Virus record (IMG/VR): IMGVR_UViG_3300020154_000003
Span: 302,039-366,038 of that record
DNA length: 64,000 bases
Reading direction: 5' to 3' (one strand)
The first letter of the stretch is position 1, and each line of letters starts with the position of its first letter. The position numbers were made by a program, and so were the translations under genes. Positions 21,176 to 63,586 of the stretch are shown here, piece after piece. A model generated the notes under the pieces. It made no database searches. It was not told the origin of the DNA and worked only from the letters and a program-made list of their open reading frames with translations.

Positions 21176-24100
21176 TTATTGAGGCTCCTGAGGAACTATT
21201 TGTCTCAATAAAATTTCCTTATTGTTTCTTTGCTTACCAGAATAAATATCGAAAAGAAGTTTCTTCAGAATTTCACCGATCTGCTGACCACTATAACCCA
21301 AGGCCAATAAATCATTTCCATTAACTTGCAGTTCTCGCAACGAGAACGGCATACCCATAGACCTCATCTCCTTGATACTGTCTTTTATCTTATCAGGAAT
21401 TATTTGGGAGTTGATCGCATCGGGATAAATCTTATACATGTTGAAGACGGTGATTTTGTTTTTAACTGCACTATCCGAATCGTCTTTAAATGCAAGTTCC
21501 AATGCTCTCATCTCATTGTATGTTGTAAGGTCACCTTTCAAGCTGTTCTTATAAAACTCAGCAGGGTTAGGTATGCCGTACTTTGTCAATTGGTAAATAA
21601 ATTCACCCATAGTTTTAACGTTGTTGAATTCAGCAACGTTGATCTCAGTGTCAACACTAAATATCTGTTCATACAAACCAGTTTCTTTCAATAATTGAGC
21701 ACCAACTGTTGGCTTACCTTTCTTCACAATCTTATCGAATTCAATCAATATTCTCTCAGGAGAAATTTCTCTTATTTTAAAGGCATTTTGTTGGATTGCC
21801 TTTAATGTTTGAGGTTCTATTTTGAAATCAAATCTGGATGCAAATTGAACAGCACGTAGCATTCTCAAAGGGTCTTCCGAAAAGGCTTTCGGATTAACCA
21901 TTCTGATGAGTTTATCTTTTATGTCCTGACTTCCACCGTATGGGTCAATCATTTGTCCATGAGAATCCTTAGCGATTGCATTTATGGTGAAATCCCTTCG
22001 TTCTAAGTCTTTTTCAATGGGTAACGTGTGATCTGACGTAACTTCAAATCCCTGATACCCACCCTGACCCGTGGCCCTTTCGGTTCTTGGTACTGCAATA
22101 TCCAACTCCCCTGTTTGAGGGGTCGTAAATTTGATGATTCCAAACGATTTACCGACATTATCCACGCGACCGTACTTGGCTAAGATTTTCTCAATATCTT
22201 CCAATGGAACGCCTGTAATGAGCAAATCCAAGTCTTTAGATGGTTTGTTCAACATCCCATCACGAACAGCACCACCCACGGAGTAGATTTTACCGCCTGC
22301 GAGTTCAATATCGTTTTTGAAGGGTAGCATGTCTAAATTTGCAATATTTTCGTTGATTTTGCCCTTTTTTGGCTTTAAAACGGTTTTTTTCTTGTCTTTC
22401 GTTGAAAAAACTAGCTTTTCAGACTGCAATTTAATGTTTTTCTTGAACTTCTTACCATATTTCTTACCAGTACCCTTTTTAACATAAGAAATAGTCATGT
22501 GAGGATGATAATCCTTAAATCTATTGGTGTAAGGGAGTTCTTTTAACGCCTTATTTAAGTTTTTCAAGGTTTGAGTAGGGACAACATCAAATTTAACTAC
22601 GTCAAAGTCAGGAGTTTCGAAGTGAGACACCTCTTTTAACTCTATTTCGATGGGTTTTGAGATGTCGATGATGCTTTCCACAATAGCCCTTACCTGATTC
22701 GCGTCAACTCCATCATGGAAGCCATAAAGAATGGTTATATGCGGGTCTTTTTCAATACCAAAGGTTGGTTTGTCATAAATATCGTCTTTTTCGATCATGG
22801 ACGTAATTTCATCCCAATTCGAAACCTTTATTTCTAACATCAACACACCGAATTCTACCTTCTCCTTTCTTTCGGCTTCGGCAAGCATTTCCTTAATTAA
22901 GGGTTCTGCCATGTCCTGTACCTCACCGTCTTGATCCATAAACTCGTCCCAATATCCGCTCATGTCTTGTATTTCAACCATCTCAGGCTGAAATTTAACA
23001 TCAGGTATTTTCTTCCACGTATATCCACCACCAGTTTCATAGTTATATGGCGAAATATCAACATGCATCAATATTCTGTTAGCTGTATCATAAACATATA
23101 TCGAAGTGTGACATTCGTATTCACTGTATCTTGTAAAACACCCATAATCACTATTACTAGTGACTACATCACACATTTTATCTGCAATATCATCGCATAT
23201 ACCACCAGAACCATACATTTCATCATATCCTTCATGATCTTGTTCCCATTCATTATATACTTCCTGAGCAACTGTAGCAAATTGTGTCTTCAAGGATTCC
23301 AATTTAGACTTCAATGCTAAAACAGGAGAATTTTCATTCAGAGATTCATACATCTCATCTGTATCGTCAACTATTTTAATTGATGATGGTTCGAATACAA
23401 TATAGTTGGTTGCATCAGGATTGGTTTTATCACTCATCATATTCCCCACGTATCCAGCTTTACTTAGAAACATTGATGCTGCTTTATTACTACCTAGCAC
23501 GGCAGCTAACCATTCATATACTTGTTTATTTGTGATGTCATAACGATATGATTCATCGTAAAAGTCACTTTGAAACTGTTCAATATCAATATCACTCAAA
23601 CCTAAATTTCTGCCGCGACCAAGTATGTATGAAGCTAAATGATCATCGATGGTTTCATCAAAATTCAAATACCTTCCGTCTCTCAATTGAACGTTCAATA
23701 TCTTATCACCATAGATGGATGCCACTTGAGGGTCATTAGTGAAGTAAAAACCCCATCCTCCCAATTCTCTACCGTCTGATGAACCTATTTTTTTTAATGA
23801 GAAAGCATTAAATTTACTTTTACTGGAAGTACCGTGGTAAGCATCGATTTCACTTACTCTACTTAATTCTTCCTTAATTGTTTGTGTTACTATCGCATTG
23901 ATGTCGCCTTGGTTGCAGGGAGTACTGGTGCCATCACCATTACCGTTTATTTGACACTTCTTCTTGATACCAACAGCTTTCGCATCAGGCATGTACGTCA
24001 TTACTCTTTCAAGAATAGCATTTTCAAGCTTGAGCAATTCAACCTGATCCATCTCTTTATGTGCTGAATATCCAAGATCATAATATGCAAGTACACCCTT

Positions 24101-25393
24101 TCTAAAACCAAAATTCTCTTCAGTAAAATCCGCGCTTCTCACACCATGATCCATGAGTTCTTTAATAACCGCAAGCATTAGTCCAACATTGCGTTTCAAT
24201 TGAGGATTTTGAATCGTTGCCGATTTCTTAACTATTTCATTAAATGCAGGTCTGTCAGATTTTTTTATCATATCTGCAATTTGACTCCATCCAGCAGGTG
24301 ATAAATCCATAAAACCCATGAAGTCAGCGATTATGTCAATTACTCTTTCAGGATCAACGTCAAGTTTTTCACGAAGAATTATATAAATTTTGTCGTTCGG
24401 TTCGTTTAATCTATATGACCCATAAAAACGTCCAATATGTTTTGTGTTCTTACCAACCAATCTTGATGCTTCAATTGCTTCACCTCTATCTGAGGTAATC
24501 TTCAAGATTTTATTACCTCCAATATCAAACGCATAACCTTGAGTTCCCTTACCTAAATTAGCAACAATGCTATGACCTAATTTATTTGCTACTTTAGTGG
24601 CGAAATCATTGATATTAGAATTCTGCCTCATGAGATGTCTTTCTATATCTTCTACCGCCTCATCAACAACTACATTCTCCAATGCCAGTACATCCGCATT
24701 AGGTTTGTCCTTATCACCAGTCATCCCATAATCAAAAAATCCTATCTGACCATTCTTCTTATATCCTAAATTATTGGCACTCAAATCCAAACTTTTCATG
24801 TTATTGGATTTAAGTTCTTTCACAATATTTAAAAGTGAATTGTAGAAATGTTTTTCATTGGGATAATCATTAAGTAAATGCTCAATGTCTGCAGCAAAAT
24901 GTTCATACATTTGAGGTTTACTGGTAGCCATGTCGATAAAGGCTACAGCAAAAAATTTATGGCCAAATCTACTTTGCAATAAATCATCTAAATTTTCAAA
25001 AAGTGTATCAAATTTGGTGGGATCAACCGTTAGTTTTTCACAGATAATGAGGAATACTTTTTTGTTAACACCCCTTTTGTCGATTTCGTAAACTTGATAT
25101 ACATCTGCTAGAAGTTTGTTCCGTTTGCCTTTGATTTTTAAAGCTTCAATAGCTTCAGAGGGATCAATAGTCAATTTATAAACCTTGTCACCAGAAATGT
25201 ATGCGATACCATTGTATCCTTCGCCAGCATAAGTTGGGAGTTTTAAGATTCCTAATTTACCTACCACATCCTTTAATATTTCATCAGCTACTTTTCTATC
25301 CAAAATAGTTTCATTGATAATATTGGAAGCAATGAAGTCTTCAGCAATTACTCGTATAAATTCTCTTCTAATAATTTCTGGCTGTTTACTCAT
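21176..25393 (-). CDS. Polyvalent protein: kinase-like x2, ADP-ribosyltransferase-like, unknown domain, 2H phosphoesterase (Acb1/gp57B-like), CCA-adding nucleotidyltransferase
   Basis: Kinase 1 GEGYNG/VYK/DLSANN/FDYG; kinase 2 GKGTQG/LKI/DFTEEN/YDLG; AYHGT..GFYFT; HITI and HMTI; VGGAVRD..DLD, RRDFTINA, DPLRMLRA. Confidence 0.85.
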   Translation of the reverse strand: MSKQPEIIRREFIRVIAEDFIASNIINETILDRKVADEILKDVVGKLGILKLPTYAGEGYNGIAYISGDKVYKLTIDPSEAIEALKIKGKRNKLLADVYQVYEIDKRGVNKKVFLIICEKLTVDPTKFDTLFENLDDLLQSRFGHKFFAVAFIDMATSKPQMYEHFAADIEHLLNDYPNEKHFYNSLLNIVKELKSNNMKSLDLSANNLGYKKNGQIGFFDYGMTGDKDKPNADVLALENVVVDEAVEDIERHLMRQNSNINDFATKVANKLGHSIVANLGKGTQGYAFDIGGNKILKITSDRGEAIEASRLVGKNTKHIGRFYGSYRLNEPNDKIYIILREKLDVDPERVIDIIADFMGFMDLSPAGWSQIADMIKKSDRPAFNEIVKKSATIQNPQLKRNVGLMLAVIKELMDHGVRSADFTEENFGFRKGVLAYYDLGYSAHKEMDQVELLKLENAILERVMTYMPDAKAVGIKKKCQINGNGDGTSTPCNQGDINAIVTQTIKEELSRVSEIDAYHGTSSKSKFNAFSLKKIGSSDGRELGGWGFYFTNDPQVASIYGDKILNVQLRDGRYLNFDETIDDHLASYILGRGRNLGLSDIDIEQFQSDFYDESYRYDITNKQVYEWLAAVLGSNKAASMFLSKAGYVGNMMSDKTNPDATNYIVFEPSSIKIVDDTDEMYESLNENSPVLALKSKLESLKTQFATVAQEVYNEWEQDHEGYDEMYGSGGICDDIADKMCDVVTSNSDYGCFTRYSEYECHTSIYVYDTANRILMHVDISPYNYETGGGYTWKKIPDVKFQPEMVEIQDMSGYWDEFMDQDGEVQDMAEPLIKEMLAEAERKEKVEFGVLMLEIKVSNWDEITSMIEKDDIYDKPTFGIEKDPHITILYGFHDGVDANQVRAIVESIIDISKPIEIELKEVSHFETPDFDVVKFDVVPTQTLKNLNKALKELPYTNRFKDYHPHMTISYVKKGTGKKYGKKFKKNIKLQSEKLVFSTKDKKKTVLKPKKGKINENIANLDMLPFKNDIELAGGKIYSVGGAVRDGMLNKPSKDLDLLITGVPLEDIEKILAKYGRVDNVGKSFGIIKFTTPQTGELDIAVPRTERATGQGGYQGFEVTSDHTLPIEKDLERRDFTINAIAKDSHGQMIDPYGGSQDIKDKLIRMVNPKAFSEDPLRMLRAVQFASRFDFKIEPQTLKAIQQNAFKIREISPERILIEFDKIVKKGKPTVGAQLLKETGLYEQIFSVDTEINVAEFNNVKTMGEFIYQLTKYGIPNPAEFYKNSLKGDLTTYNEMRALELAFKDDSDSAVKNKITVFNMYKIYPDAINSQIIPDKIKDSIKEMRSMGMPFSLRELQVNGNDLLALGYSGQQIGEILKKLLFDIYSGKQRNNKEILLRQIVPQEPQ

Positions 25394-57632: not shown

Positions 57633-59771
57633 TTACATCAACTGTGCAGCTTTGTCGTAGCTGGTTATAAAGTCTTCATACTTGAATTGAGTAGTGCTAC
57701 CATCAGGTGAAGATACCGCCACGCCTCTACTTCTAGCATGTAAACATGCAAGATCGTACACGGATAATTTGTCTTTGGTGATCAACGATCTCAGAATTTG
57801 TGAAGTCTGACCTCTACTGTTCTCCAGAGTAGCAAGACTTCCTGATTCCAGTTCCAAATCAGCCCAAATGTATTCTTTCATCAACAAATCGATGATACAG
57901 ATAACCACTGTCGAACTCTCATTAGCCAATGTCATGGCATTACTGATCGTTTTAGGAACGAAAAGAGGGTTCGATTCAGGATATTCTCTTTCCATCAGAC
58001 CAAACACGCAATCCTTCATGGTATGCATAGGTCTGCTTTGGAAATTATGTACTTGAACCACAGCATATCTCGCACCAGCATCATTACATGCGTTCACGTC
58101 AATATCAACGTATTCAGCACAAGCACCTTGTCTATGTCTTACGTCACCTGAGTGGCAAGAATTCAACGCAGCACTTTGCAAACGAGTAAATGATATATGA
58201 TCAACATTTTTCAAATCATTTGCATGAAATGAAACACTCAAATCCAAATCTTCGTAACCCTGTTCATCAAACCAATGGATGTAAGGTCTGATAACTTTTG
58301 CAGACTCAGCAAAAGGAATTCTTGTTCCTCTCACGTAAGTTTTAACAGAAGTATTGATACTTCTCATTGCCGATGGCAATGGAATGTTTTTCAACCTTTC
58401 ATCAATCCAGACACTACCCAACGGTTCAAGGTTACCAAACTGATCGGAGATACAGTTCAAAATAACTCTCTGAATTAAGGAAATTAACTCAGCATTTATC
58501 GGAGGTAGTGGCTCCAACTGCTTTTTGATTGATCTCTTACCTTTGATCATCACGCTTCTCGGAACATTTACTGTTGCTCTGTTTAAGAAATGGTTATATA
58601 GTTCCCACAAAACCTTTCTACTCACTTTAGGAGCGATTTTTTGAAATGTTTCCAGTACTGGAACAGCATCAAAGTTTCTCAACATCCAGTCAAGCCTTCT
58701 AGCATATTCTCCGGGTCTTTGGGATAGAACAGCCATACCTTTCAATTGACTTTCCTTAAAAGCAGCCTCAACTAAACCATTGAAGGTCTTAATTTCCTTT
58801 GCAGCGTTTCTCAACACATCGAAGGCAGATGCAGTTCTAGGAAACTGTTTTGCATATTCGGATGGGTGAAGAATTTCACCGAGTCTCAACCATCTTCCGA
58901 TTTTGAGTTTCATTTCACCCAAGTCGAGATTGGTTTTTTCAAGTAACCCAAGAAGATACTTTCTTTCACTTCTTGAAAATTTCTTGAACTTAAAACGTTC
59001 TCTTGCAGCTTCTTGAAACGCTTTGATATTGTTAAAAAACCATTTTTTTCTACCGTCTTTAACCTCACCGATAGTGACTTTTGGAACAGCAGGCAATGAA
59101 ATATCACCACCTGAAAGGTGTGTAGCGATTCTCAACACATCGGTTGCTGTTTTAACAGGTACGTTTAAACCATGACCAGCAAGCAAGCACAATGTTTCCT
59201 TGAAAGGAACCGTTGATGGCATAACCAAAGAATCACGCTGATTCAATATAAACCATTCAACTACAGCTTTATCGTTTTCAGTGATTGACTGATTGATAGA
59301 TACAAGTCTTGTGAAGATATTCGCAAACCCTTCTTCAGTACCAAGCTGGATAAGTGAAAACTCAGTGTTTTCAAACTTAATACCTCTGTCAAGTAATTCT
59401 TGATCAGGTTCCCATTTACCTTCAGACCAGTAATGTTTAACAGCCATTCTGAACAAGCCTATAAGACTTGTTTCCATGACTTGCTTAGGAAAATTCTTAA
59501 AAAGAGGGGAATAGTTGCCAACACCTAATTTCTTTTGAAGATGGGCAACAGCTTCGATATACCAATCGATGGAAACTACTTCCAAAGCTTCGGGGGATAG
59601 GATGTACCCCAATTGCATTAACTCAGCTTGGATTGTGTCAGCCACCGCAGACGAAACTGAACCGTCAGAAGTCGGAATCATCATCCCTCTTTGGAGGGCA
59701 ATGATATTTTTGGTTAAAGAACTTTCATTAGTTCTAACTTTAACGGCAGCGTTCGCAGTAGATGTACTCAT
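57633..59771 (-). CDS. Large alpha-helical protein with C-terminal TerD-like domain
   Basis: C-terminal DLDLSV...HSGDV...AEYVDID...RYAVVQVHNF TerD pattern; helical N-terminal region of about 480 aa. Confidence 0.7.
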   Translation of the reverse strand: MSTSTANAAVKVRTNESSLTKNIIALQRGMMIPTSDGSVSSAVADTIQAELMQLGYILSPEALEVVSIDWYIEAVAHLQKKLGVGNYSPLFKNFPKQVMETSLIGLFRMAVKHYWSEGKWEPDQELLDRGIKFENTEFSLIQLGTEEGFANIFTRLVSINQSITENDKAVVEWFILNQRDSLVMPSTVPFKETLCLLAGHGLNVPVKTATDVLRIATHLSGGDISLPAVPKVTIGEVKDGRKKWFFNNIKAFQEAARERFKFKKFSRSERKYLLGLLEKTNLDLGEMKLKIGRWLRLGEILHPSEYAKQFPRTASAFDVLRNAAKEIKTFNGLVEAAFKESQLKGMAVLSQRPGEYARRLDWMLRNFDAVPVLETFQKIAPKVSRKVLWELYNHFLNRATVNVPRSVMIKGKRSIKKQLEPLPPINAELISLIQRVILNCISDQFGNLEPLGSVWIDERLKNIPLPSAMRSINTSVKTYVRGTRIPFAESAKVIRPYIHWFDEQGYEDLDLSVSFHANDLKNVDHISFTRLQSAALNSCHSGDVRHRQGACAEYVDIDVNACNDAGARYAVVQVHNFQSRPMHTMKDCVFGLMEREYPESNPLFVPKTISNAMTLANESSTVVICIIDLLMKEYIWADLELESGSLATLENSRGQTSQILRSLITKDKLSVYDLACLHARSRGVAVSSPDGSTTQFKYEDFITSYDKAAQLM

Positions 59772-59798
59772 AACAGGTATAAGGTTAAAATAAAAAAA

Positions 59799-59870
59799 CT
59801 CTGGTAATTAATTACAGTAATTGGTCAAACATGAATTGATTTTTAGAAGTAACCATATTTGTAGCCAGAG
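59799..59870 (-). ncRNA. Structured 72-nt RNA unit 3 (closed by CTCTGG/CCAGAG)
   Basis: Terminal inverted repeat; GGCTA-N6-TGGTTACTTCTAAA...AATTACTG-N10-CC; followed by T7. Confidence 0.65.
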
Positions 59871-59880
59871 TAAATTGTAA

Positions 59881-59953
59881 ATATAAGGAAATTTGAATCA
59901 GTAGTTGTTTATCCATTTGTAGTTTAGAAGTAACCAACCCGATAGCCTTATAT
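59881..59953 (-). ncRNA. Structured 73-nt RNA unit 2 (closed by ATATAAGG/CCTTATAT)
   Basis: Terminal inverted repeat; same motif spacing as unit 3; carries TTCAAAT, a T-loop-like heptamer. Confidence 0.65.
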
Positions 59954-59968
59954 TGTACCTTTGAAAAG

Positions 59969-60040
59969 TAGGGATTAAGGGATTTGCACCCATATCTGTG
60001 TTCGCAATGAACACCGTTCTAAAAGTTAAACTAAGCCCCT
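59969..60040 (-). ncRNA. Degenerate 72-nt tRNA-like RNA unit 1
   Basis: Cloverleaf AGGGGCT-TA-GTTT/GAAC-G-GTGTT CATTGCG AACAC-AGAT-ATGGG TGCAAAT CCCTT-AATCCCT-A; lacks D-loop GG, TTC, U33 and CCA. Confidence 0.7.
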
Positions 60041-60058: not shown

Positions 60059-60089
60059 CAAATATAGTTAAAAGTAACTTATTGTCAAC
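60059..60089 (-). promoter_or_regulatory. Bacteroidetes-type housekeeping (early) promoter
   Basis: GTTG-N19-TATATTTG matches TTTG-N19-21-TAnnTTTG with one mismatch; also reads TTGACA-N16-TATATT. Confidence 0.7.
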
Positions 60090-60197: not shown

Positions 60198-61274
60198 TTA
60201 GAATTTGAACTCGCTAAAATCGTCATTGGACGAATCTTTATTGAGAGAACCCACAATATAACTTGAAATTTGCGTTTCTTGGGGTGCCACTTGCACATTC
60301 TTGTTCTCAATCCAGTCGTTAATCCACGTTATCGGATTGCTGGTTTTTTCGAAGATCGGATTCAGGCCGATGGTCTTCATTCTCTGATTAGTAAGAAACA
60401 TCATGTATTTCTTAAGAATTTCAGAGTTTAAACCCAACATACTTCCGTTGCTGAACAGGTAATCAGCCCATTGCATCTCTTCTTTTGCCGCATCTTCAAA
60501 CATTTTAACCACCAACGGCTCACATTCTTTCACAACTTCCGTAAATCCTTCAGTCGGCTCTTCTTTCAGTTTTTTCAACAAGAATTGTGTAAAGCCAAGG
60601 TGAAGATTTTCGTCACGACAGATCAACTTAATGATTTTCGCGTTACCTTCCATTTTCTTGTTTTCAGCAAAGCAGAAAGAACAGGCAAAACTTACGTAAA
60701 ATCTTATGCCTTCAAGAATGTTGATTGAATTCAACGTCAGGTACAATTTCTTTTTCTTCTCATGATCGTCTTCGTCCGAAAGGGCATTGATCATGTTGTC
60801 ATAATATTCAGTAACTGATGAGGTTCTTTTCAGTACTTCGTTATCGTTCAACACGTTATCAAATATTTCAGAAGGACTAGGATAGACATTCTTAATAATA
60901 TAAGTGTACGAGTACGAATGTAATTGTTCAAAGAACTCCCATGCTTTGGCAAACGCCTCTACTTCCGGGGACGAACAATTTTCAAGCAAGTTAGAGATAC
61001 CTCTGGACTGCACTGAGTCCAGAAGTATTTGGTAACTTAAGTTTTTCGTGAAAATGAACTTCTCGTTCTTTGATAATGTCTCAAAATCCGCTCTGTCCTT
61101 ACCAGCAATATCCACTTCCTCAGGTCGCCAGAAGAATCCTAGCTGCTTTTTGTAAAGTTCGAACAAATTCGAGTATCTGAATCTGTCATACCGTTGGATA
61201 TTCAAACCTTCGCCAAAAAACATTGGCTCTTTCGTAAAATCTACAGAGTTGTTGAGATTTATTATTTTTTTCAT
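60198..61274 (-). CDS. nrdB: Class Ia ribonucleotide reductase beta subunit
   Basis: FFWRPEEVD, LLDSVQSR, EQLHSYSY, LEGIRFYVSFAC, RDENLH, VAPQE; probable start MKKII at 61274. Confidence 0.95.
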   Translation of the reverse strand: MKKIINLNNSVDFTKEPMFFGEGLNIQRYDRFRYSNLFELYKKQLGFFWRPEEVDIAGKDRADFETLSKNEKFIFTKNLSYQILLDSVQSRGISNLLENCSSPEVEAFAKAWEFFEQLHSYSYTYIIKNVYPSPSEIFDNVLNDNEVLKRTSSVTEYYDNMINALSDEDDHEKKKKLYLTLNSINILEGIRFYVSFACSFCFAENKKMEGNAKIIKLICRDENLHLGFTQFLLKKLKEEPTEGFTEVVKECEPLVVKMFEDAAKEEMQWADYLFSNGSMLGLNSEILKKYMMFLTNQRMKTIGLNPIFEKTSNPITWINDWIENKNVQVAPQETQISSYIVGSLNKDSSNDDFSEFKF

Positions 61275-61288
61275 TTTATAAACTGTTT

Positions 61289-63586
61289 TTAAATTGAACA
61301 AGCACCACTTTCACATGAAGCGTCAGCAAAATTGGATGAGAAATCATCGGTAGACGCATCGTTAATGTTCGCATAATATAGAGTTTTAAGTCCCATTTTA
61401 TATGAATACATTATATCTTTTATAACCACGGACAAAGGTAATTCATTATTTGGATAATTACTATAGTCGTAGTAATGATTTGCACTAATTGATTGATCCA
61501 TCCACTTCTGCATTACAGCACAGATGTTAGTAATTCCACGGTTATCCCCCATTCCGAAAGCAAATTGGTATTTATTCTTCAATTTGCTAATGTCAGGCAC
61601 AACCTGTCTCAAAACCCCCTGTTTTGACACTTTAGCGACAATAAGTGAACGTACTGGCTCGATACCGTTCGTTGAATTGGTGGTTAAAGAACTGCTTTCA
61701 CAAGGCATTTGAGCACTTAGGGTTGAATTTCTCAATCCGTGCTGAAGAATGCTTGCTCTAAGCCCTTCCCAATCCAAAGAATACGATCTTTTCACTAAAT
61801 TATCGACTTCTCTATTATAAGTATCAATCGGAAGTATGCCTTTTGAGTATTTTGTTCTATCAAACCACTCACAAGCACCCTTTTCTTTCGCAAGTTCGTT
61901 GCTGGCCTTCAAAAGATAGTACTGGAAGTGCTCCATAAGTTCATCAATCAATGGCAATGCTGCCTTATCGGTATAAGATACGTCATTTTTCGCTAGGAAA
62001 TAGGCCAAATTTGTCAAACCAACGCCAATTGATCTTCTTTTCAACATTTTTGTTGCTGCCTTCACCGGATAATCTTGATTATCGATTACAAAATCCAGAC
62101 TTCTCACAATATTATCACAGATACCTTCCAATTCACTTAAATTTTTAAGTTCACCAACATTAATTGCAGACAATACACACAATGCTATCTCACCAGCATC
62201 ATCAATTGAGTTTTCAATGTGAGTAATCGGTGTTGTTGGTAAGGTAATTTCAACACAGAGATTTGACATCTTTATAGAATCTAAGAAAGAACTATGAATA
62301 TTTGCATGATCCATGTTCATAACATACATTCTACCAGTTTCAATTCTTTCCTGAGCGAAATTATTCATCACATCTTTTGCGGGAATTTTTTTCACAGATA
62401 TTTTTTTCTTCCCTTCATATTCTTCGTACAACTTTTCGAAGGCATCATTATCGCCTGATACGAATGCTTCATACAGATCAGGTACTTCACCCGGAGAAAA
62501 GAGTGTAATATCTTTTCCTTCAACGAATCTCTTATAGAATAAACGGTTGAATTGAATTCCATAATCCATTTTACGCACTCTGTTGTCATCAGTACCTTTG
62601 TTATTCTTCAATACTAGAATATCCAATATTTCCTTATGCCAGAACGGAAAAAATGTTGTTGATGCTCCACCTCTAATACCATTCTGAGTACATGATTTTG
62701 TGGTGGATTCAAATTTCTTTAAGAAAGGAATTACACCAGTATGAATTACTTCACCATTTCTAATCTTATCTCCAATCGCACGAATACGTCCGAAGTTCAA
62801 ACCAATACCAGCACGTTTCGATGTGTAATACATCACTGCTAAATCGCTGTGGCCAATACTATCCAACGAATCTCCAACATCAACTAGCGTACAGCTTGAA
62901 TACTGTCTGTTAGGGGTTCTAACTCCTGACATGATAGGTGTGGGCAACGAAATTTTAAAGTTGCTTATATCGTTGTAGAATGATCTAATTTTTTGAAGTC
63001 TACTCTCAGTCTCTTCAGCATACAAGGTCATCGCGATCAACATAAACATGAACTGTGGAGTCTCATACACTTTACCAGTCTTTCTATCTTTCAATAGATA
63101 CTTATCAATCAACTGTTGCAGACCAGCGTAAACGAATGTGAAATCTCTTTGATGTCTTAGATAAGAATTTAATTTTTCAAATTCTTCTTCAGTGTATTTT
63201 TCTAAAACTATTTTATCATATACTCCCACCTTCACATTTTTTTTCACAACCTCATAAAGAGATGGTAAGTTATCGCCAGCAGAATTAAAAACTTGTTTTC
63301 TCAATAAATAATTTTGAAGGTTCGCTGCAACGAATTGATAGTTGGGGGTTTCTTCCTTAATCAATGATGCTGCTGACTGAATCAATATTTTATGTATTTC
63401 CTCAGTTTTAATCCCGTTGAACAACTGCAGATTAGCATTCATCGCAATATCTGATGCAGAGACATTATTTATCCCCTCTGTTGCCCATATTAGGACTTTA
63501 TTAATTTTTTCATAATCAAGCTGAACTTTAGTGCCATCGCGCTTAATAATTTGTATGTTATCTGTTTCTACGTTATTTGAACCCAT
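61289..63586 (-). CDS. nrdA: Class Ia ribonucleotide reductase alpha subunit with ATP cone
   Basis: IIKRDG ATP cone, PTPIMSG, YSSC, SNLCVEI, LCVLSA, MPCESS, GLKTLYY, C-terminal CESGAC. Confidence 0.97.
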   Translation of the reverse strand: MGSNNVETDNIQIIKRDGTKVQLDYEKINKVLIWATEGINNVSASDIAMNANLQLFNGIKTEEIHKILIQSAASLIKEETPNYQFVAANLQNYLLRKQVFNSAGDNLPSLYEVVKKNVKVGVYDKIVLEKYTEEEFEKLNSYLRHQRDFTFVYAGLQQLIDKYLLKDRKTGKVYETPQFMFMLIAMTLYAEETESRLQKIRSFYNDISNFKISLPTPIMSGVRTPNRQYSSCTLVDVGDSLDSIGHSDLAVMYYTSKRAGIGLNFGRIRAIGDKIRNGEVIHTGVIPFLKKFESTTKSCTQNGIRGGASTTFFPFWHKEILDILVLKNNKGTDDNRVRKMDYGIQFNRLFYKRFVEGKDITLFSPGEVPDLYEAFVSGDNDAFEKLYEEYEGKKKISVKKIPAKDVMNNFAQERIETGRMYVMNMDHANIHSSFLDSIKMSNLCVEITLPTTPITHIENSIDDAGEIALCVLSAINVGELKNLSELEGICDNIVRSLDFVIDNQDYPVKAATKMLKRRSIGVGLTNLAYFLAKNDVSYTDKAALPLIDELMEHFQYYLLKASNELAKEKGACEWFDRTKYSKGILPIDTYNREVDNLVKRSYSLDWEGLRASILQHGLRNSTLSAQMPCESSSLTTNSTNGIEPVRSLIVAKVSKQGVLRQVVPDISKLKNKYQFAFGMGDNRGITNICAVMQKWMDQSISANHYYDYSNYPNNELPLSVVIKDIMYSYKMGLKTLYYANINDASTDDFSSNFADASCESGACSI

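What the first reader, a model, noticed from the sequence alone, without database searches (positions are those of the whole stretch)
59969..60040. tRNA mimic with perfect cloverleaf spacing but translation determinants removed
Seen: arm lengths match a 72-nt tRNA with a perfect 5-bp anticodon stem, but the loop CA-TTG-CG lacks U33 and purine 37, the D-loop has no GG, the T-loop is TGCAAAT, the acceptor stem has a C-A mismatch and no CCA is encoded. Inference: shape kept for a decoy or scaffold role rather than decoding; it could be a substrate of the CCA-adding domain encoded at 21176-22330.
Basis: partly seen in the sequence, partly recalled or inferred. Interest (0 to 1): 0.75.

Follow-up and report, generated by a model that had tools for sequence, protein, structure and literature searches.

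The report
Orphan non-decoding tRNA-like RNA of GOLLD operon
This is a real tRNA-shaped RNA gene in a 366-kb soil phage that cannot decode; in related phages its relatives sit right beside the giant GOLLD RNA, so it is a conserved companion of that poorly understood RNA, left behind here after GOLLD was lost.

Summary
Window 59968-60040 (minus strand) folds as a cloverleaf. ARAGORN calls it tRNA-Gln(UUG) and Rfam's tRNA model gives 36.2 bits. It has A33, C37, no D-loop GG, T-loop UGCAAAU and a C6•A67 mismatch, while all 52 array tRNAs of the same phage have GG and TTC. It is not a simple pseudogene. Sixteen homologous units from 12 phage loci keep the cloverleaf by covariation (94.7% paired, 17/20 pairs compensatory, 0/500 shuffles). 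None conserves an anticodon, and 15/16 "anticodon arms" close to 3-6-nt loops. In 7/7 GOLLD-bearing relatives the unit lies 11-142 nt 3' of a GOLLD RNA, under one orthologous promoter, and abuts a new covarying leader motif before a TerD-family gene. The window's genome has no GOLLD, so its unit is an orphan. A sister lineage has deleted its interior. Missing CCA is the norm here (46/52 real tRNAs), so the link to the CCA-adding domain is not specific. The most likely role is a tRNA-shaped processing (RNase P/3'-end) module bounding RNA domains. This is inferred, not shown.

The parts
59968..60040 (-). tRNA-like RNA: cloverleaf with A33, C37, no G18G19, T-loop UGCAAAU, C6.A67 and U50.U64 non-canonical pairs, and discriminator A plus C74
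   Evidence: ARAGORN; Rfam tRNA 36.2 bits; family model R1 79.4 bits; determinants compared with the genome's tRNAs; family covariation
60059..60088 (-). Promoter TTGACA-16-TATATT(TG), with the -7 motif TAnnTTTG. It ends 20 nt before the tRNA-like 5' end and is orthologous to the promoter that drives GOLLD in relatives.
   Evidence: Consensus scan, 11/12 match; the same promoter in all 11 loci
59882..59952 (-). Leader RNA unit 1 (P1 UAUAAGG/CCUUAUA, GGCUAU, GUUACUUCUA loop). It starts about 15 nt after the tRNA-like 3' end.
   Evidence: Unit definition (L048:2320-2390); covariation in 13/15 pairs over 33 units
59798..59871 (-). Leader RNA unit 2 (P1 ACUCUGG/CCAGAGU), followed by a U-run at 59785-59797 just before the start codon
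   Evidence: L048:2401-2474
57633..59771 (-). Downstream gene: 712-aa TerD-domain family protein with no Pfam hit. It served as the anchor for finding all related loci.
   Evidence: ORF; no Pfam match; phrog_33734; ESM Atlas TerD-family / SCO0854-like clusters, TM 0.8; more than 1000 homologues
60198..61301 (-). Upstream gene nrdB (class I ribonucleotide reductase small subunit). In the relative L015, GOLLD lies between nrdB and the tRNA-like unit.
   Evidence: Pfam PF00268; synteny
21176..25393 (-). 1405-aa polyvalent protein with a C-terminal CCA-adding/poly(A) polymerase-type nucleotidyltransferase, a 2H phosphoesterase and ART-PolyVal. It is a possible but non-specific 3'-end maturation enzyme.
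   Evidence: Pfam PF01743, PF12627, PF13735, PF13563, PF18760

Best explanation
The element is a genuine, transcribed-strand, tRNA-shaped RNA that does not decode. It belongs to a conserved family of tRNA-like units that form part of a GOLLD-type non-coding RNA operon in a clade of roughly 360-kb soil phages. The ancestral unit is: promoter, (tRNA-like), GOLLD of about 0.8 kb, one or two tRNA-like units, two or three structured leader units, TerD-family gene. In the window's phage GOLLD has been lost, so the same promoter now sits 20 nt upstream of a single orphan tRNA-like unit. Proposed mechanism (inferred): the unit keeps only what tRNA-end enzymes need, namely a 7-bp acceptor stem stacked on a 5-bp T-stem, a 7-nt T-loop with U54/A58, the U8-A14 / A15-U48 core, and discriminator plus C74. 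RNase P would cut at its 5' end, and the tRNA 3'-end pathway (trimming plus CCA addition) would act at its 3' end. This would separate and define the ends of the neighbouring RNA modules: the GOLLD 3' end upstream and the leader or mRNA 5' end downstream. Loss of the anticodon loop and of the G18G19/U55C56 elbow would keep it out of translation. What is shown: the structure, the family, the covariation, the absence of any conserved anticodon, the GOLLD linkage, and orphan status in this genome. What is inferred: transcription, RNase P / 3' processing, and the boundary-defining role.
For: Cloverleaf and missing determinants. Family of 16 units in 12 loci with 94.7% of cells paired, 17/20 pairs with double changes, and 0/500 shuffles reaching the observed value (slid controls 37-64%); the 8-unit set is. 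G.U pairs fit only the minus-strand RNA. 15/16 'anticodon arms' fold to loops of 3-6 nt and no anticodon is shared. GOLLD (RF02032, 156-174 bits against a gathering score of 150) lies directly 5' of the unit in 7/7 GOLLD+ loci; L140 has units on both sides of GOLLD. There is one orthologous promoter in all 11 loci. The unit's 3' end abuts the first leader unit, 5-20 nt away. The window genome and L017's genome hold no GOLLD. GOLLD was lost at least 3 times independently while the tRNA-like unit was retained (tree; unit matching). The N73-C74 3' design is the same as in 46/52 real tRNAs of the phage, and L013b, L128 and L131 encode a full CCA. U at -1 occurs in 7/10 members. Close variants in other soil samples keep the unit, with changes only in its loops. 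Literature: GOLLD lies near tRNA islands, with linked, embedded or pseudo tRNAs.
Against: No RNA data are available; the runs that hold the locus are DNA or contigs only, so transcription, cleavage sites and CCA addition are all unobserved. The altered elbow (no G19-C56) removes a contact that bacterial RNase P normally uses. A sister lineage (L132-134, flanks about 95% identical) deleted 58 nt of the interior and left only the acceptor hairpin, so the L-shape is dispensable there. The window copy has the weakest predicted fold in the family (MFE -16.2 kcal/mol, z -0.85). Substitution density inside the unit is not significantly lower than in the flanks in close variants (p=0.33). The family tree rests on one protein.
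Confidence: 0.45

Rival explanations
1. Trans-acting tRNA mimic. The unit is matured to a stable CCA-ended RNA that stays off the ribosome. It then binds or soaks up factors that recognise tRNA shape or the acceptor end, such as host tRNA-end-targeting defence toxins or the phage's own CCA-adding / 2H-phosphoesterase polyvalent protein.
For: It has its own strong promoter with a short leader, like a tRNA gene. Some members encode CCA, and C74 is conserved. The changes to the elbow and anticodon would exclude it from translation. The phage encodes tRNA-end repair-type domains. The same genome holds another anticodon-arm-less tRNA with encoded CCA. L128's member lies next to a T4 Rnl1-type RNA ligase.
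Against: No conserved loop or acceptor sequence exists that a specific partner could read. The unit is always wedged 5-20 nt from neighbouring RNA modules, not free-standing. There is one locus per genome. It is deleted in a viable sister lineage. There is no expression or binding evidence.
Confidence: 0.2
2. Vestige in this genome. The family is functional only together with GOLLD, for example as tethered partner or cargo of the GOLLD nanocage, or as its end-forming signal. After GOLLD loss, the window's copy is a neutral relic on its way out.
For: G000 has no GOLLD. The window copy has the weakest fold in the family. The sister lineage deleted the interior. Constraint against the flanks is not significant. 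Kretsch et al. propose that GOLLD cages may carry covalently linked tRNAs.
Against: tRNA-like units were retained after at least 3 independent GOLLD losses, and L017 keeps two well-folded units (z about -2.2 to -2.5). The window's two non-canonical pairs recur at the same positions in the GOLLD+ locus L138 and in L140b, so they are subtype traits and not decay. Variants X2 and X8 change only loop bases.
Confidence: 0.25
3. It is a working, if odd, tRNA-Gln(UUG) that is charged and decodes CAA/CAG.
For: ARAGORN and Rfam call it a tRNA. UUG sits at positions 34-36 in three members. L013a and L139 have a canonical-looking loop, CUUUGGG.
Against: A33 and C37 are present, and C32-G38 can close the loop to 5 nt. 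There is no GG or TTC. Orthologues have UCG or no anticodon at all, with 3-8-nt loops. The phage already has canonical tRNA-Gln(UUG) and (CUG) genes with U1-A72 that are only 42-49% identical to it.
Confidence: 0.03

Closest known systems
tRNAs and pseudo-tRNAs linked to GOLLD RNA (Rfam RF02032; Weinberg et al. 2009 as cited in the papers read; Behra et al. 2019, PMC6582537; Kretsch et al. 2024, doi 10.1101/2024.12.08.627333)
   Same: Encoded in phages, in the same transcription unit or locus as GOLLD, and immediately adjacent to it. A 'pseudo tRNA' inside a mycobacterial GOLLD gene has been reported, and tRNAs in the GOLLD linker have been noted.
   Different: This is a defined homologous family with covarying stems, no anticodon and a changed elbow. 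It lies at the 3' boundary of GOLLD (and in L140 also at the 5' boundary), not inside it. It is retained after GOLLD loss. The window's genome has no GOLLD at all.
tRNA-like processing elements such as MALAT1-mascRNA (PMC8457004, seen), tRNA-snoRNA/miRNA dicistrons, and tRNA punctuation of polycistronic RNAs
   Same: A cloverleaf without decoding function, placed exactly between functional RNA modules. In those systems the ends of the neighbouring modules are made by RNase P and RNase Z, followed by CCA addition. That is the way this element is proposed to work.
   Different: Those systems are eukaryotic, organellar or herpesviral. No cleavage has been demonstrated for this element. This one belongs to a bacteriophage and has its own bacterial-type promoter.
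Canonical bacterial/phage tRNA (Rfam RF00005)
   Same: Cloverleaf arm lengths, U8, A14, A21, G53-C61, U54, A58, discriminator plus C74, and a score above the Rfam gathering threshold.
   Different: No U33/R37, no G18G19, G55 in place of U55, variable position 56, no anticodon conserved among orthologues, and a score at the bottom of its own genome's tRNA distribution.
Non-proteinogenic tRNA-Gly of staphylococci (cell-wall synthesis). This comparison rests on my own recollection and was not checked in a paper.
   Same: Recalled to replace G18G19 and the T-Psi-C sequence, giving a tRNA that stays away from the ribosome and EF-Tu.
   Different: Those tRNAs keep a functional anticodon loop and synthetase identity and are aminoacylated. 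The family here has no conserved identity elements.
Bacterial Y RNA (YrlA) tRNA-like domain with Rsr/Ro60
   Same: A tRNA-like module in a non-coding RNA that is also found in phages.
   Different: The neighbouring 712-aa protein belongs to a TerD-domain family and is not a TROVE/Ro60 protein. No Y-RNA Rfam hit was found.

Membership tests
Canonical decoding tRNA (RF00005) | Cloverleaf with 7/4/5/5-bp stems and a score above Rfam's gathering threshold | tested here: met
   36.2 bits against 29; ARAGORN call
Canonical decoding tRNA (RF00005) | 7-nt anticodon loop with U33 and a purine at position 37, and no Watson-Crick 32-38 pair | tested here: not met
   The loop is CAUUGCG (A33, C37) and C32-G38 pairs in the MFE fold. 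By comparison, 50/52 array tRNAs have U33 and R37.
Canonical decoding tRNA (RF00005) | Elbow nucleotides G18G19 and T54-Psi55-C56 | tested here: not met
   The D-loop is AACUUUUA and the T-loop is UGCAAAU. All 52 array tRNAs have GG and TTC.
Canonical decoding tRNA (RF00005) | Anticodon conserved among orthologues | tested here: not met
   Orthologous units have UUG, UCG or no triplet at all, with loops of 3-8 nt.
Canonical decoding tRNA (RF00005) | Aminoacylation and use on the ribosome | not testable with these tools
   Needs an acid-gel northern and polysome analysis
GOLLD-linked tRNA-like unit (the family defined here, model R1) | Sequence and structure homology to the family | tested here: met
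   79.4 bits for the window copy, which was in the training set. Independent members score 44-74 bits. Shared D-loop AAYUNUUA, T-loop YGNRAAU and A15/U48.
GOLLD-linked tRNA-like unit (the family defined here, model R1) | Same locus: orthologous promoter upstream, with leader units and the TerD-family gene downstream | tested here: met
GOLLD-linked tRNA-like unit (the family defined here, model R1) | Adjacent GOLLD RNA | tested here: not met
   G000 has no GOLLD (best hit 8.7 bits), whereas 7/7 GOLLD+ relatives have the unit. The window copy is an orphan.
tRNA-like processing element (mascRNA type) | Cleavage by RNase P at the 5' end and by RNase Z or trimming at the 3' end, then CCA addition | not testable with these tools
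   No RNA reads were available. The only support is indirect: position at module boundaries and C74.
Y RNA / YrlA with Ro60 | Neighbouring TROVE-domain Rsr protein and a Ro-binding helix | tested here: not met
   The neighbour is a TerD-family protein. No Rfam Y-RNA hit was found.

The most novel reading that the evidence does not exclude
Anticodon-less, elbow-altered tRNA-like RNAs are obligate boundary modules of GOLLD operons in huge phages. They recruit host RNase P and 3'-end enzymes (or stay tethered) to release or present the GOLLD nanocage RNA. Together with a previously undescribed covarying leader motif, they couple GOLLD to the expression of a TerD-family gene. This would give the first defined operon context for GOLLD and a testable maturation pathway. 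The window shows that this module can outlive GOLLD.
Probability: 0.3. Interest if true: 0.75.

Novelty: new variant of a known kind. Interest (0 to 1): 0.55.

Why it matters
GOLLD is one of the largest bacterial and phage non-coding RNAs. It forms a 14-mer nanocage, and its function is unknown. Its association with tRNA genes has been noted for years without explanation. Here one clade of huge phages shows a fixed operon: promoter, GOLLD, non-decoding tRNA-like unit(s), a new structured leader motif, and a TerD-family gene. Natural variants have lost GOLLD at least three times, or have lost the tRNA-like interior once. That set of variants is a ready-made deletion series for asking how GOLLD ends are made and what the tRNA-like units do. 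It also shows that tRNA-finder calls in phage genomes can be conserved non-decoding RNAs, and so should be read neither as extra isoacceptors nor as dead pseudogenes. For this window alone the element is an orphan of modest importance.

Tried and rejected
1. An exact 18-mer search of the anticodon arm in IMG/VR gave 6 hits, all in unrelated GC-rich contexts with no tRNA call. These are chance matches.

2. blastn of the locus, and of GOLLD plus the tRNA-like region, against deposited phages found nothing. tblastn of the anchor protein found only distant phage hits of 30% identity or less, so the host remains unknown.

3. The idea that the unit is a recent copy of the phage's tRNA-Gln(UUG) was rejected. 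Identity to canonical Gln tRNAs is only 40-49%, and they carry U1-A72, GG and TTC.

4. The idea that the 712-aa neighbour is a Ro60-like RNA-binding partner (the YrlA analogy) was rejected. It belongs to a TerD-domain family.

5. My first reading was that the window copy is eroding because of its two mismatches. I weakened this, because the same C6.A67 and U50.U64 pairs recur in L138 and L140b. The weak predicted stability still stands.

6. The motif GGTTACTTCTA was rejected as a genome-wide phage promoter. It has only 2 exact copies in 366 kb, both at this locus, and it is part of a covarying RNA. It was also rejected as a short ORF, because the start codon is not conserved.

7. The acceptor stem plus U-run was rejected as a terminator, because the U-run is not conserved among members.

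8. Expression evidence could not be obtained. The runs holding the locus are DNA or contig-only, so no ends or CCA tails could be read.

10. Two papers (Morgado 2020 and Weinberg 2009) were not held in the library.

11. Model R1 also scores ordinary tRNAs at 20-49 bits. Membership of L128, L131, L141 and L015b therefore rests on their shared D- and T-loop signature, not on score alone.

Full report
**What is at the coordinates**

The window is the last 64 kb of a 366,038-bp, 36% GC phage genome from a soil metagenome. ARAGORN finds one tRNA in the window, tRNA-Gln(ttg), at 59968-60040 on the minus strand. Rfam's tRNA model matches 59969-60040(-) at 36.2 bits against a gathering score of 29 when the region is searched alone. 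The whole-window run with default filters missed it.

- Acceptor AGGGGCU/AAUCCCU, with G5.U68 and a C6xA67 mismatch.
- D-arm GUUU-AACUUUUA-GAAC, with no GG.
- A perfect 5-bp stem GUGUU/AACAC closing the loop CAUUGCG (A33, C37).
- T-arm AUGGG-UGCAAAU-CCCUU, which also has a U50xU64 mismatch.
- Discriminator A, then C, with no CCA.

**How unusual it is in its own genome**

The phage has about 54 tRNA calls, and 52 of them lie in arrays at 89-126 kb. All 52 have GG in the D-loop and TTC in the T-loop, and nearly all have U33 and R37. The candidate fails all four tests. Its Rfam score ranks 52nd of 56 hits, where genuine tRNAs score 45-70 bits.

One listed "removed determinant" is not special. 46 of the 52 genuine tRNAs also encode only N73-C74 and no CCA. 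The CCA-adding domain in the 1405-aa polyvalent protein is real, but it therefore has dozens of ordinary substrates.

**It is not a simple pseudogene**

I anchored on the downstream 712-aa gene, which has more than 1000 homologues, and on nrdB. This recovered related loci from IMG/VR, JGI metagenomes and Logan/ENA assemblies. A covariance model built from six units found 16 units in 12 loci.

On that alignment:
- 94.7% of helix cells are standard pairs.
- 17 of 20 pairs show changes on both sides.
- 0 of 500 shuffles reach the observed value, and slid controls give 37-64% (the 8-unit set is).
- G.U pairs fit only the minus-strand RNA.

Every unit lacks the D-loop GG and has a T-loop of the form Y54-G55-N56-R57-A58. 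The tRNA core nucleotides are kept: U8, A14, A15/U48, A21, G53-C61.

The anticodon arm behaves differently. Its stem covaries, but the loop varies in sequence and length, and in 15 of 16 units the arm folds to a 3-6-nt loop, often cUUCGg-like or closed by C32-G38. No anticodon is conserved. The canonical tRNA-Gln genes of these phages are only 40-49% identical to the family.

The family is therefore a structurally constrained, non-decoding tRNA-like RNA.

**Context: a GOLLD operon**

In L013, L014, L015 and L137-L140 the unit lies 11-142 nt downstream of a GOLLD RNA (RF02032, 156-174 bits against a gathering score of 150). That is 7 of 7 GOLLD+ loci.

L140 has tRNA-like units on both sides of GOLLD. 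The first sits 21 nt after the promoter.

A single orthologous promoter (TTGACA-N16/17-TAnnTTTG) heads all 11 loci. At its 3' side the tRNA-like unit abuts, within 5-20 nt, the first of 2-3 structured leader units that precede the TerD-family gene.

The window's genome and L017's complete genome contain no GOLLD. In both, the promoter sits about 20 nt from the tRNA-like unit.

On a tree of the anchor protein the GOLLD-less loci are not monophyletic:
- L141 is nested in the GOLLD+ clade (support 96/94).
- L017 is sister to L140 (support 93/91).
- The window plus L132 sit on their own long branch.

This implies at least three independent GOLLD losses, each with the tRNA-like unit(s) retained. 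L017's two tandem units match L140's 5' and 3' flanking units, which points to a precise excision of GOLLD.

The literature read here says GOLLD is a phage/prophage RNA near tRNA islands. It forms a 14-mer nanocage, sometimes carries tRNAs in its linker, and in one mycobacterial case contains a "pseudo tRNA".

**State of the window's copy**

It has the least stable predicted fold in the family: MFE -16.2 kcal/mol, z -0.85, against z -2.1 to -3.7 for most homologues.

In the closest lineage (L132-134; anchor protein 90% identical, flanks about 95% identical) 58 nt of the interior are cleanly deleted. What remains is the acceptor hairpin GUAGGG-UUAGU-CCCUAC.

Several observations argue against simple decay:
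- The C6.A67 and U50.U64 pairs recur at the same positions in L138, and C6.A67 also recurs in L140b.
- Contigs from two other soil samples keep the unit, with changes only in loops: U17>A in the D-loop and C56>U in the T-loop. The density of changes is not significantly below that of the flanks (p=0.33).

**Mechanism**

The following are shown:
- A covarying cloverleaf RNA with no decoding features.
- A fixed position at the boundaries between RNA modules of one transcription unit.
- The same 3' design as the phage's real tRNAs, with a full CCA encoded in L013b, L128 and L131.

From this I infer that it works as a tRNA-shaped processing module. RNase P would cut at its 5' end, and tRNA 3'-end enzymes plus a CCA-adding enzyme would act at its 3' end. 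That would define the GOLLD 3' end and the leader 5' end, in the manner of MALAT1-mascRNA or tRNA punctuation. The missing anticodon loop and elbow would keep it out of translation.

No RNA data exist to test this. The rivals are:
- A trans-acting tRNA mimic or decoy.
- A partner of the GOLLD cage that is vestigial in this genome.
- A working tRNA-Gln, which is very unlikely.

**Verdict**

The element is a new variant of a known kind: GOLLD-linked tRNA(-like) elements and tRNA-like processing modules. Its main value is the operon context it reveals for GOLLD, together with a new leader RNA motif. The window's copy itself is an orphan.

Noticed in passing
window 59798-59871 and 59882-59952 (minus strand); also 44 further units in related loci, e.g. 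L054:2410-2484 and L073:2397-2469: A previously undescribed structured RNA motif, absent from Rfam 15, occurs in 1-4 tandem copies in the leader of the TerD-family gene. Its layout is P1, GGCUAY, P2, loop GUUACUUC(U/A)A, optional hairpin, (A)CCACU, P2', AUUUCC, P1', often followed by a U-run. 13 of 15 pairs covary over 33 units from phages of 19-64% GC. GGTTACTTCTA occurs only twice in the 366-kb genome. It is a candidate riboswitch-like or protein-bound attenuator.
   Followed up: partly
G000:C1:190147-190206 (minus strand), outside the window: A 60-nt tRNA with no anticodon arm at all. It has a 7-bp acceptor stem, a canonical D-arm (AGUUGGUUA) and T-arm (UUCGAUU), discriminator A and an encoded CCA. 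It scores 45.4 bits on Rfam's tRNA model and ARAGORN missed it.
   Followed up: no
G000:C1:249729-249818 (minus strand), outside the window: A 90-nt tRNA-like element with canonical D- and T-arms and a long insert or extended helix in the anticodon arm (44.3 bits). It may be an intron-containing tRNA or another mimic.
   Followed up: no
G000 tRNA arrays at 89-126 kb, outside the window: There are two suppressor tRNA(CUA) genes (123540 and 125586), two calls with 6-nt anticodon loops (89259 and 93896), and several 85-91-nt versions of normally short tRNAs (Lys, Met, Asn, Thr). These hint at TAG recoding or tRNA introns, but the window's ORFs are intact in code 11.
   Followed up: no
window 21176-25393 (minus strand): A 1405-aa polyvalent protein combines ART-PolyVal (ADP-ribosyltransferase), a 2H phosphoesterase / Acb1-like domain and a C-terminal CCA-adding-type nucleotidyltransferase. 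This looks like a tRNA-end repair and counter-defence fusion.
   Followed up: partly
L027:2252-2325, L040:1730-1801, L085:495-568: Distant relatives carry a second odd tRNA type just upstream of the same TerD-family gene. It is a 'tRNA-Cys(GCA)' with C33 in place of U33, no D-loop GG and T-loop UUUAAAU/UUUGAAU. In L027 and L040 it is directly followed by a tRNA-Sup(CUA) call.
   Followed up: no
L013:~1990-2015, L014:~2035-2058, L015:~1995-2020: A hairpin with compensatory changes (CUUCGGG/CCCGAAG, CUUCGAU/AUCGAAG, CCUCGGUUU/AACCGGGG) sits between the GOLLD 3' domain and the tRNA-like unit, 5-8 nt before the latter. It may cap the 3' end of GOLLD.
   Followed up: no
window 60059-60066 and the orthologous promoters: The -10 region has the form TAnnTTTG, which matches the -7 element I recall for Bacteroidota sigma-A promoters (from my own knowledge, not checked). 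This hints at a Bacteroidota host, but no cultured relative was found.
   Followed up: no
L137:243-1151 (minus strand): An HNH endonuclease gene is inserted between nrdB and the GOLLD promoter in one relative.
   Followed up: no
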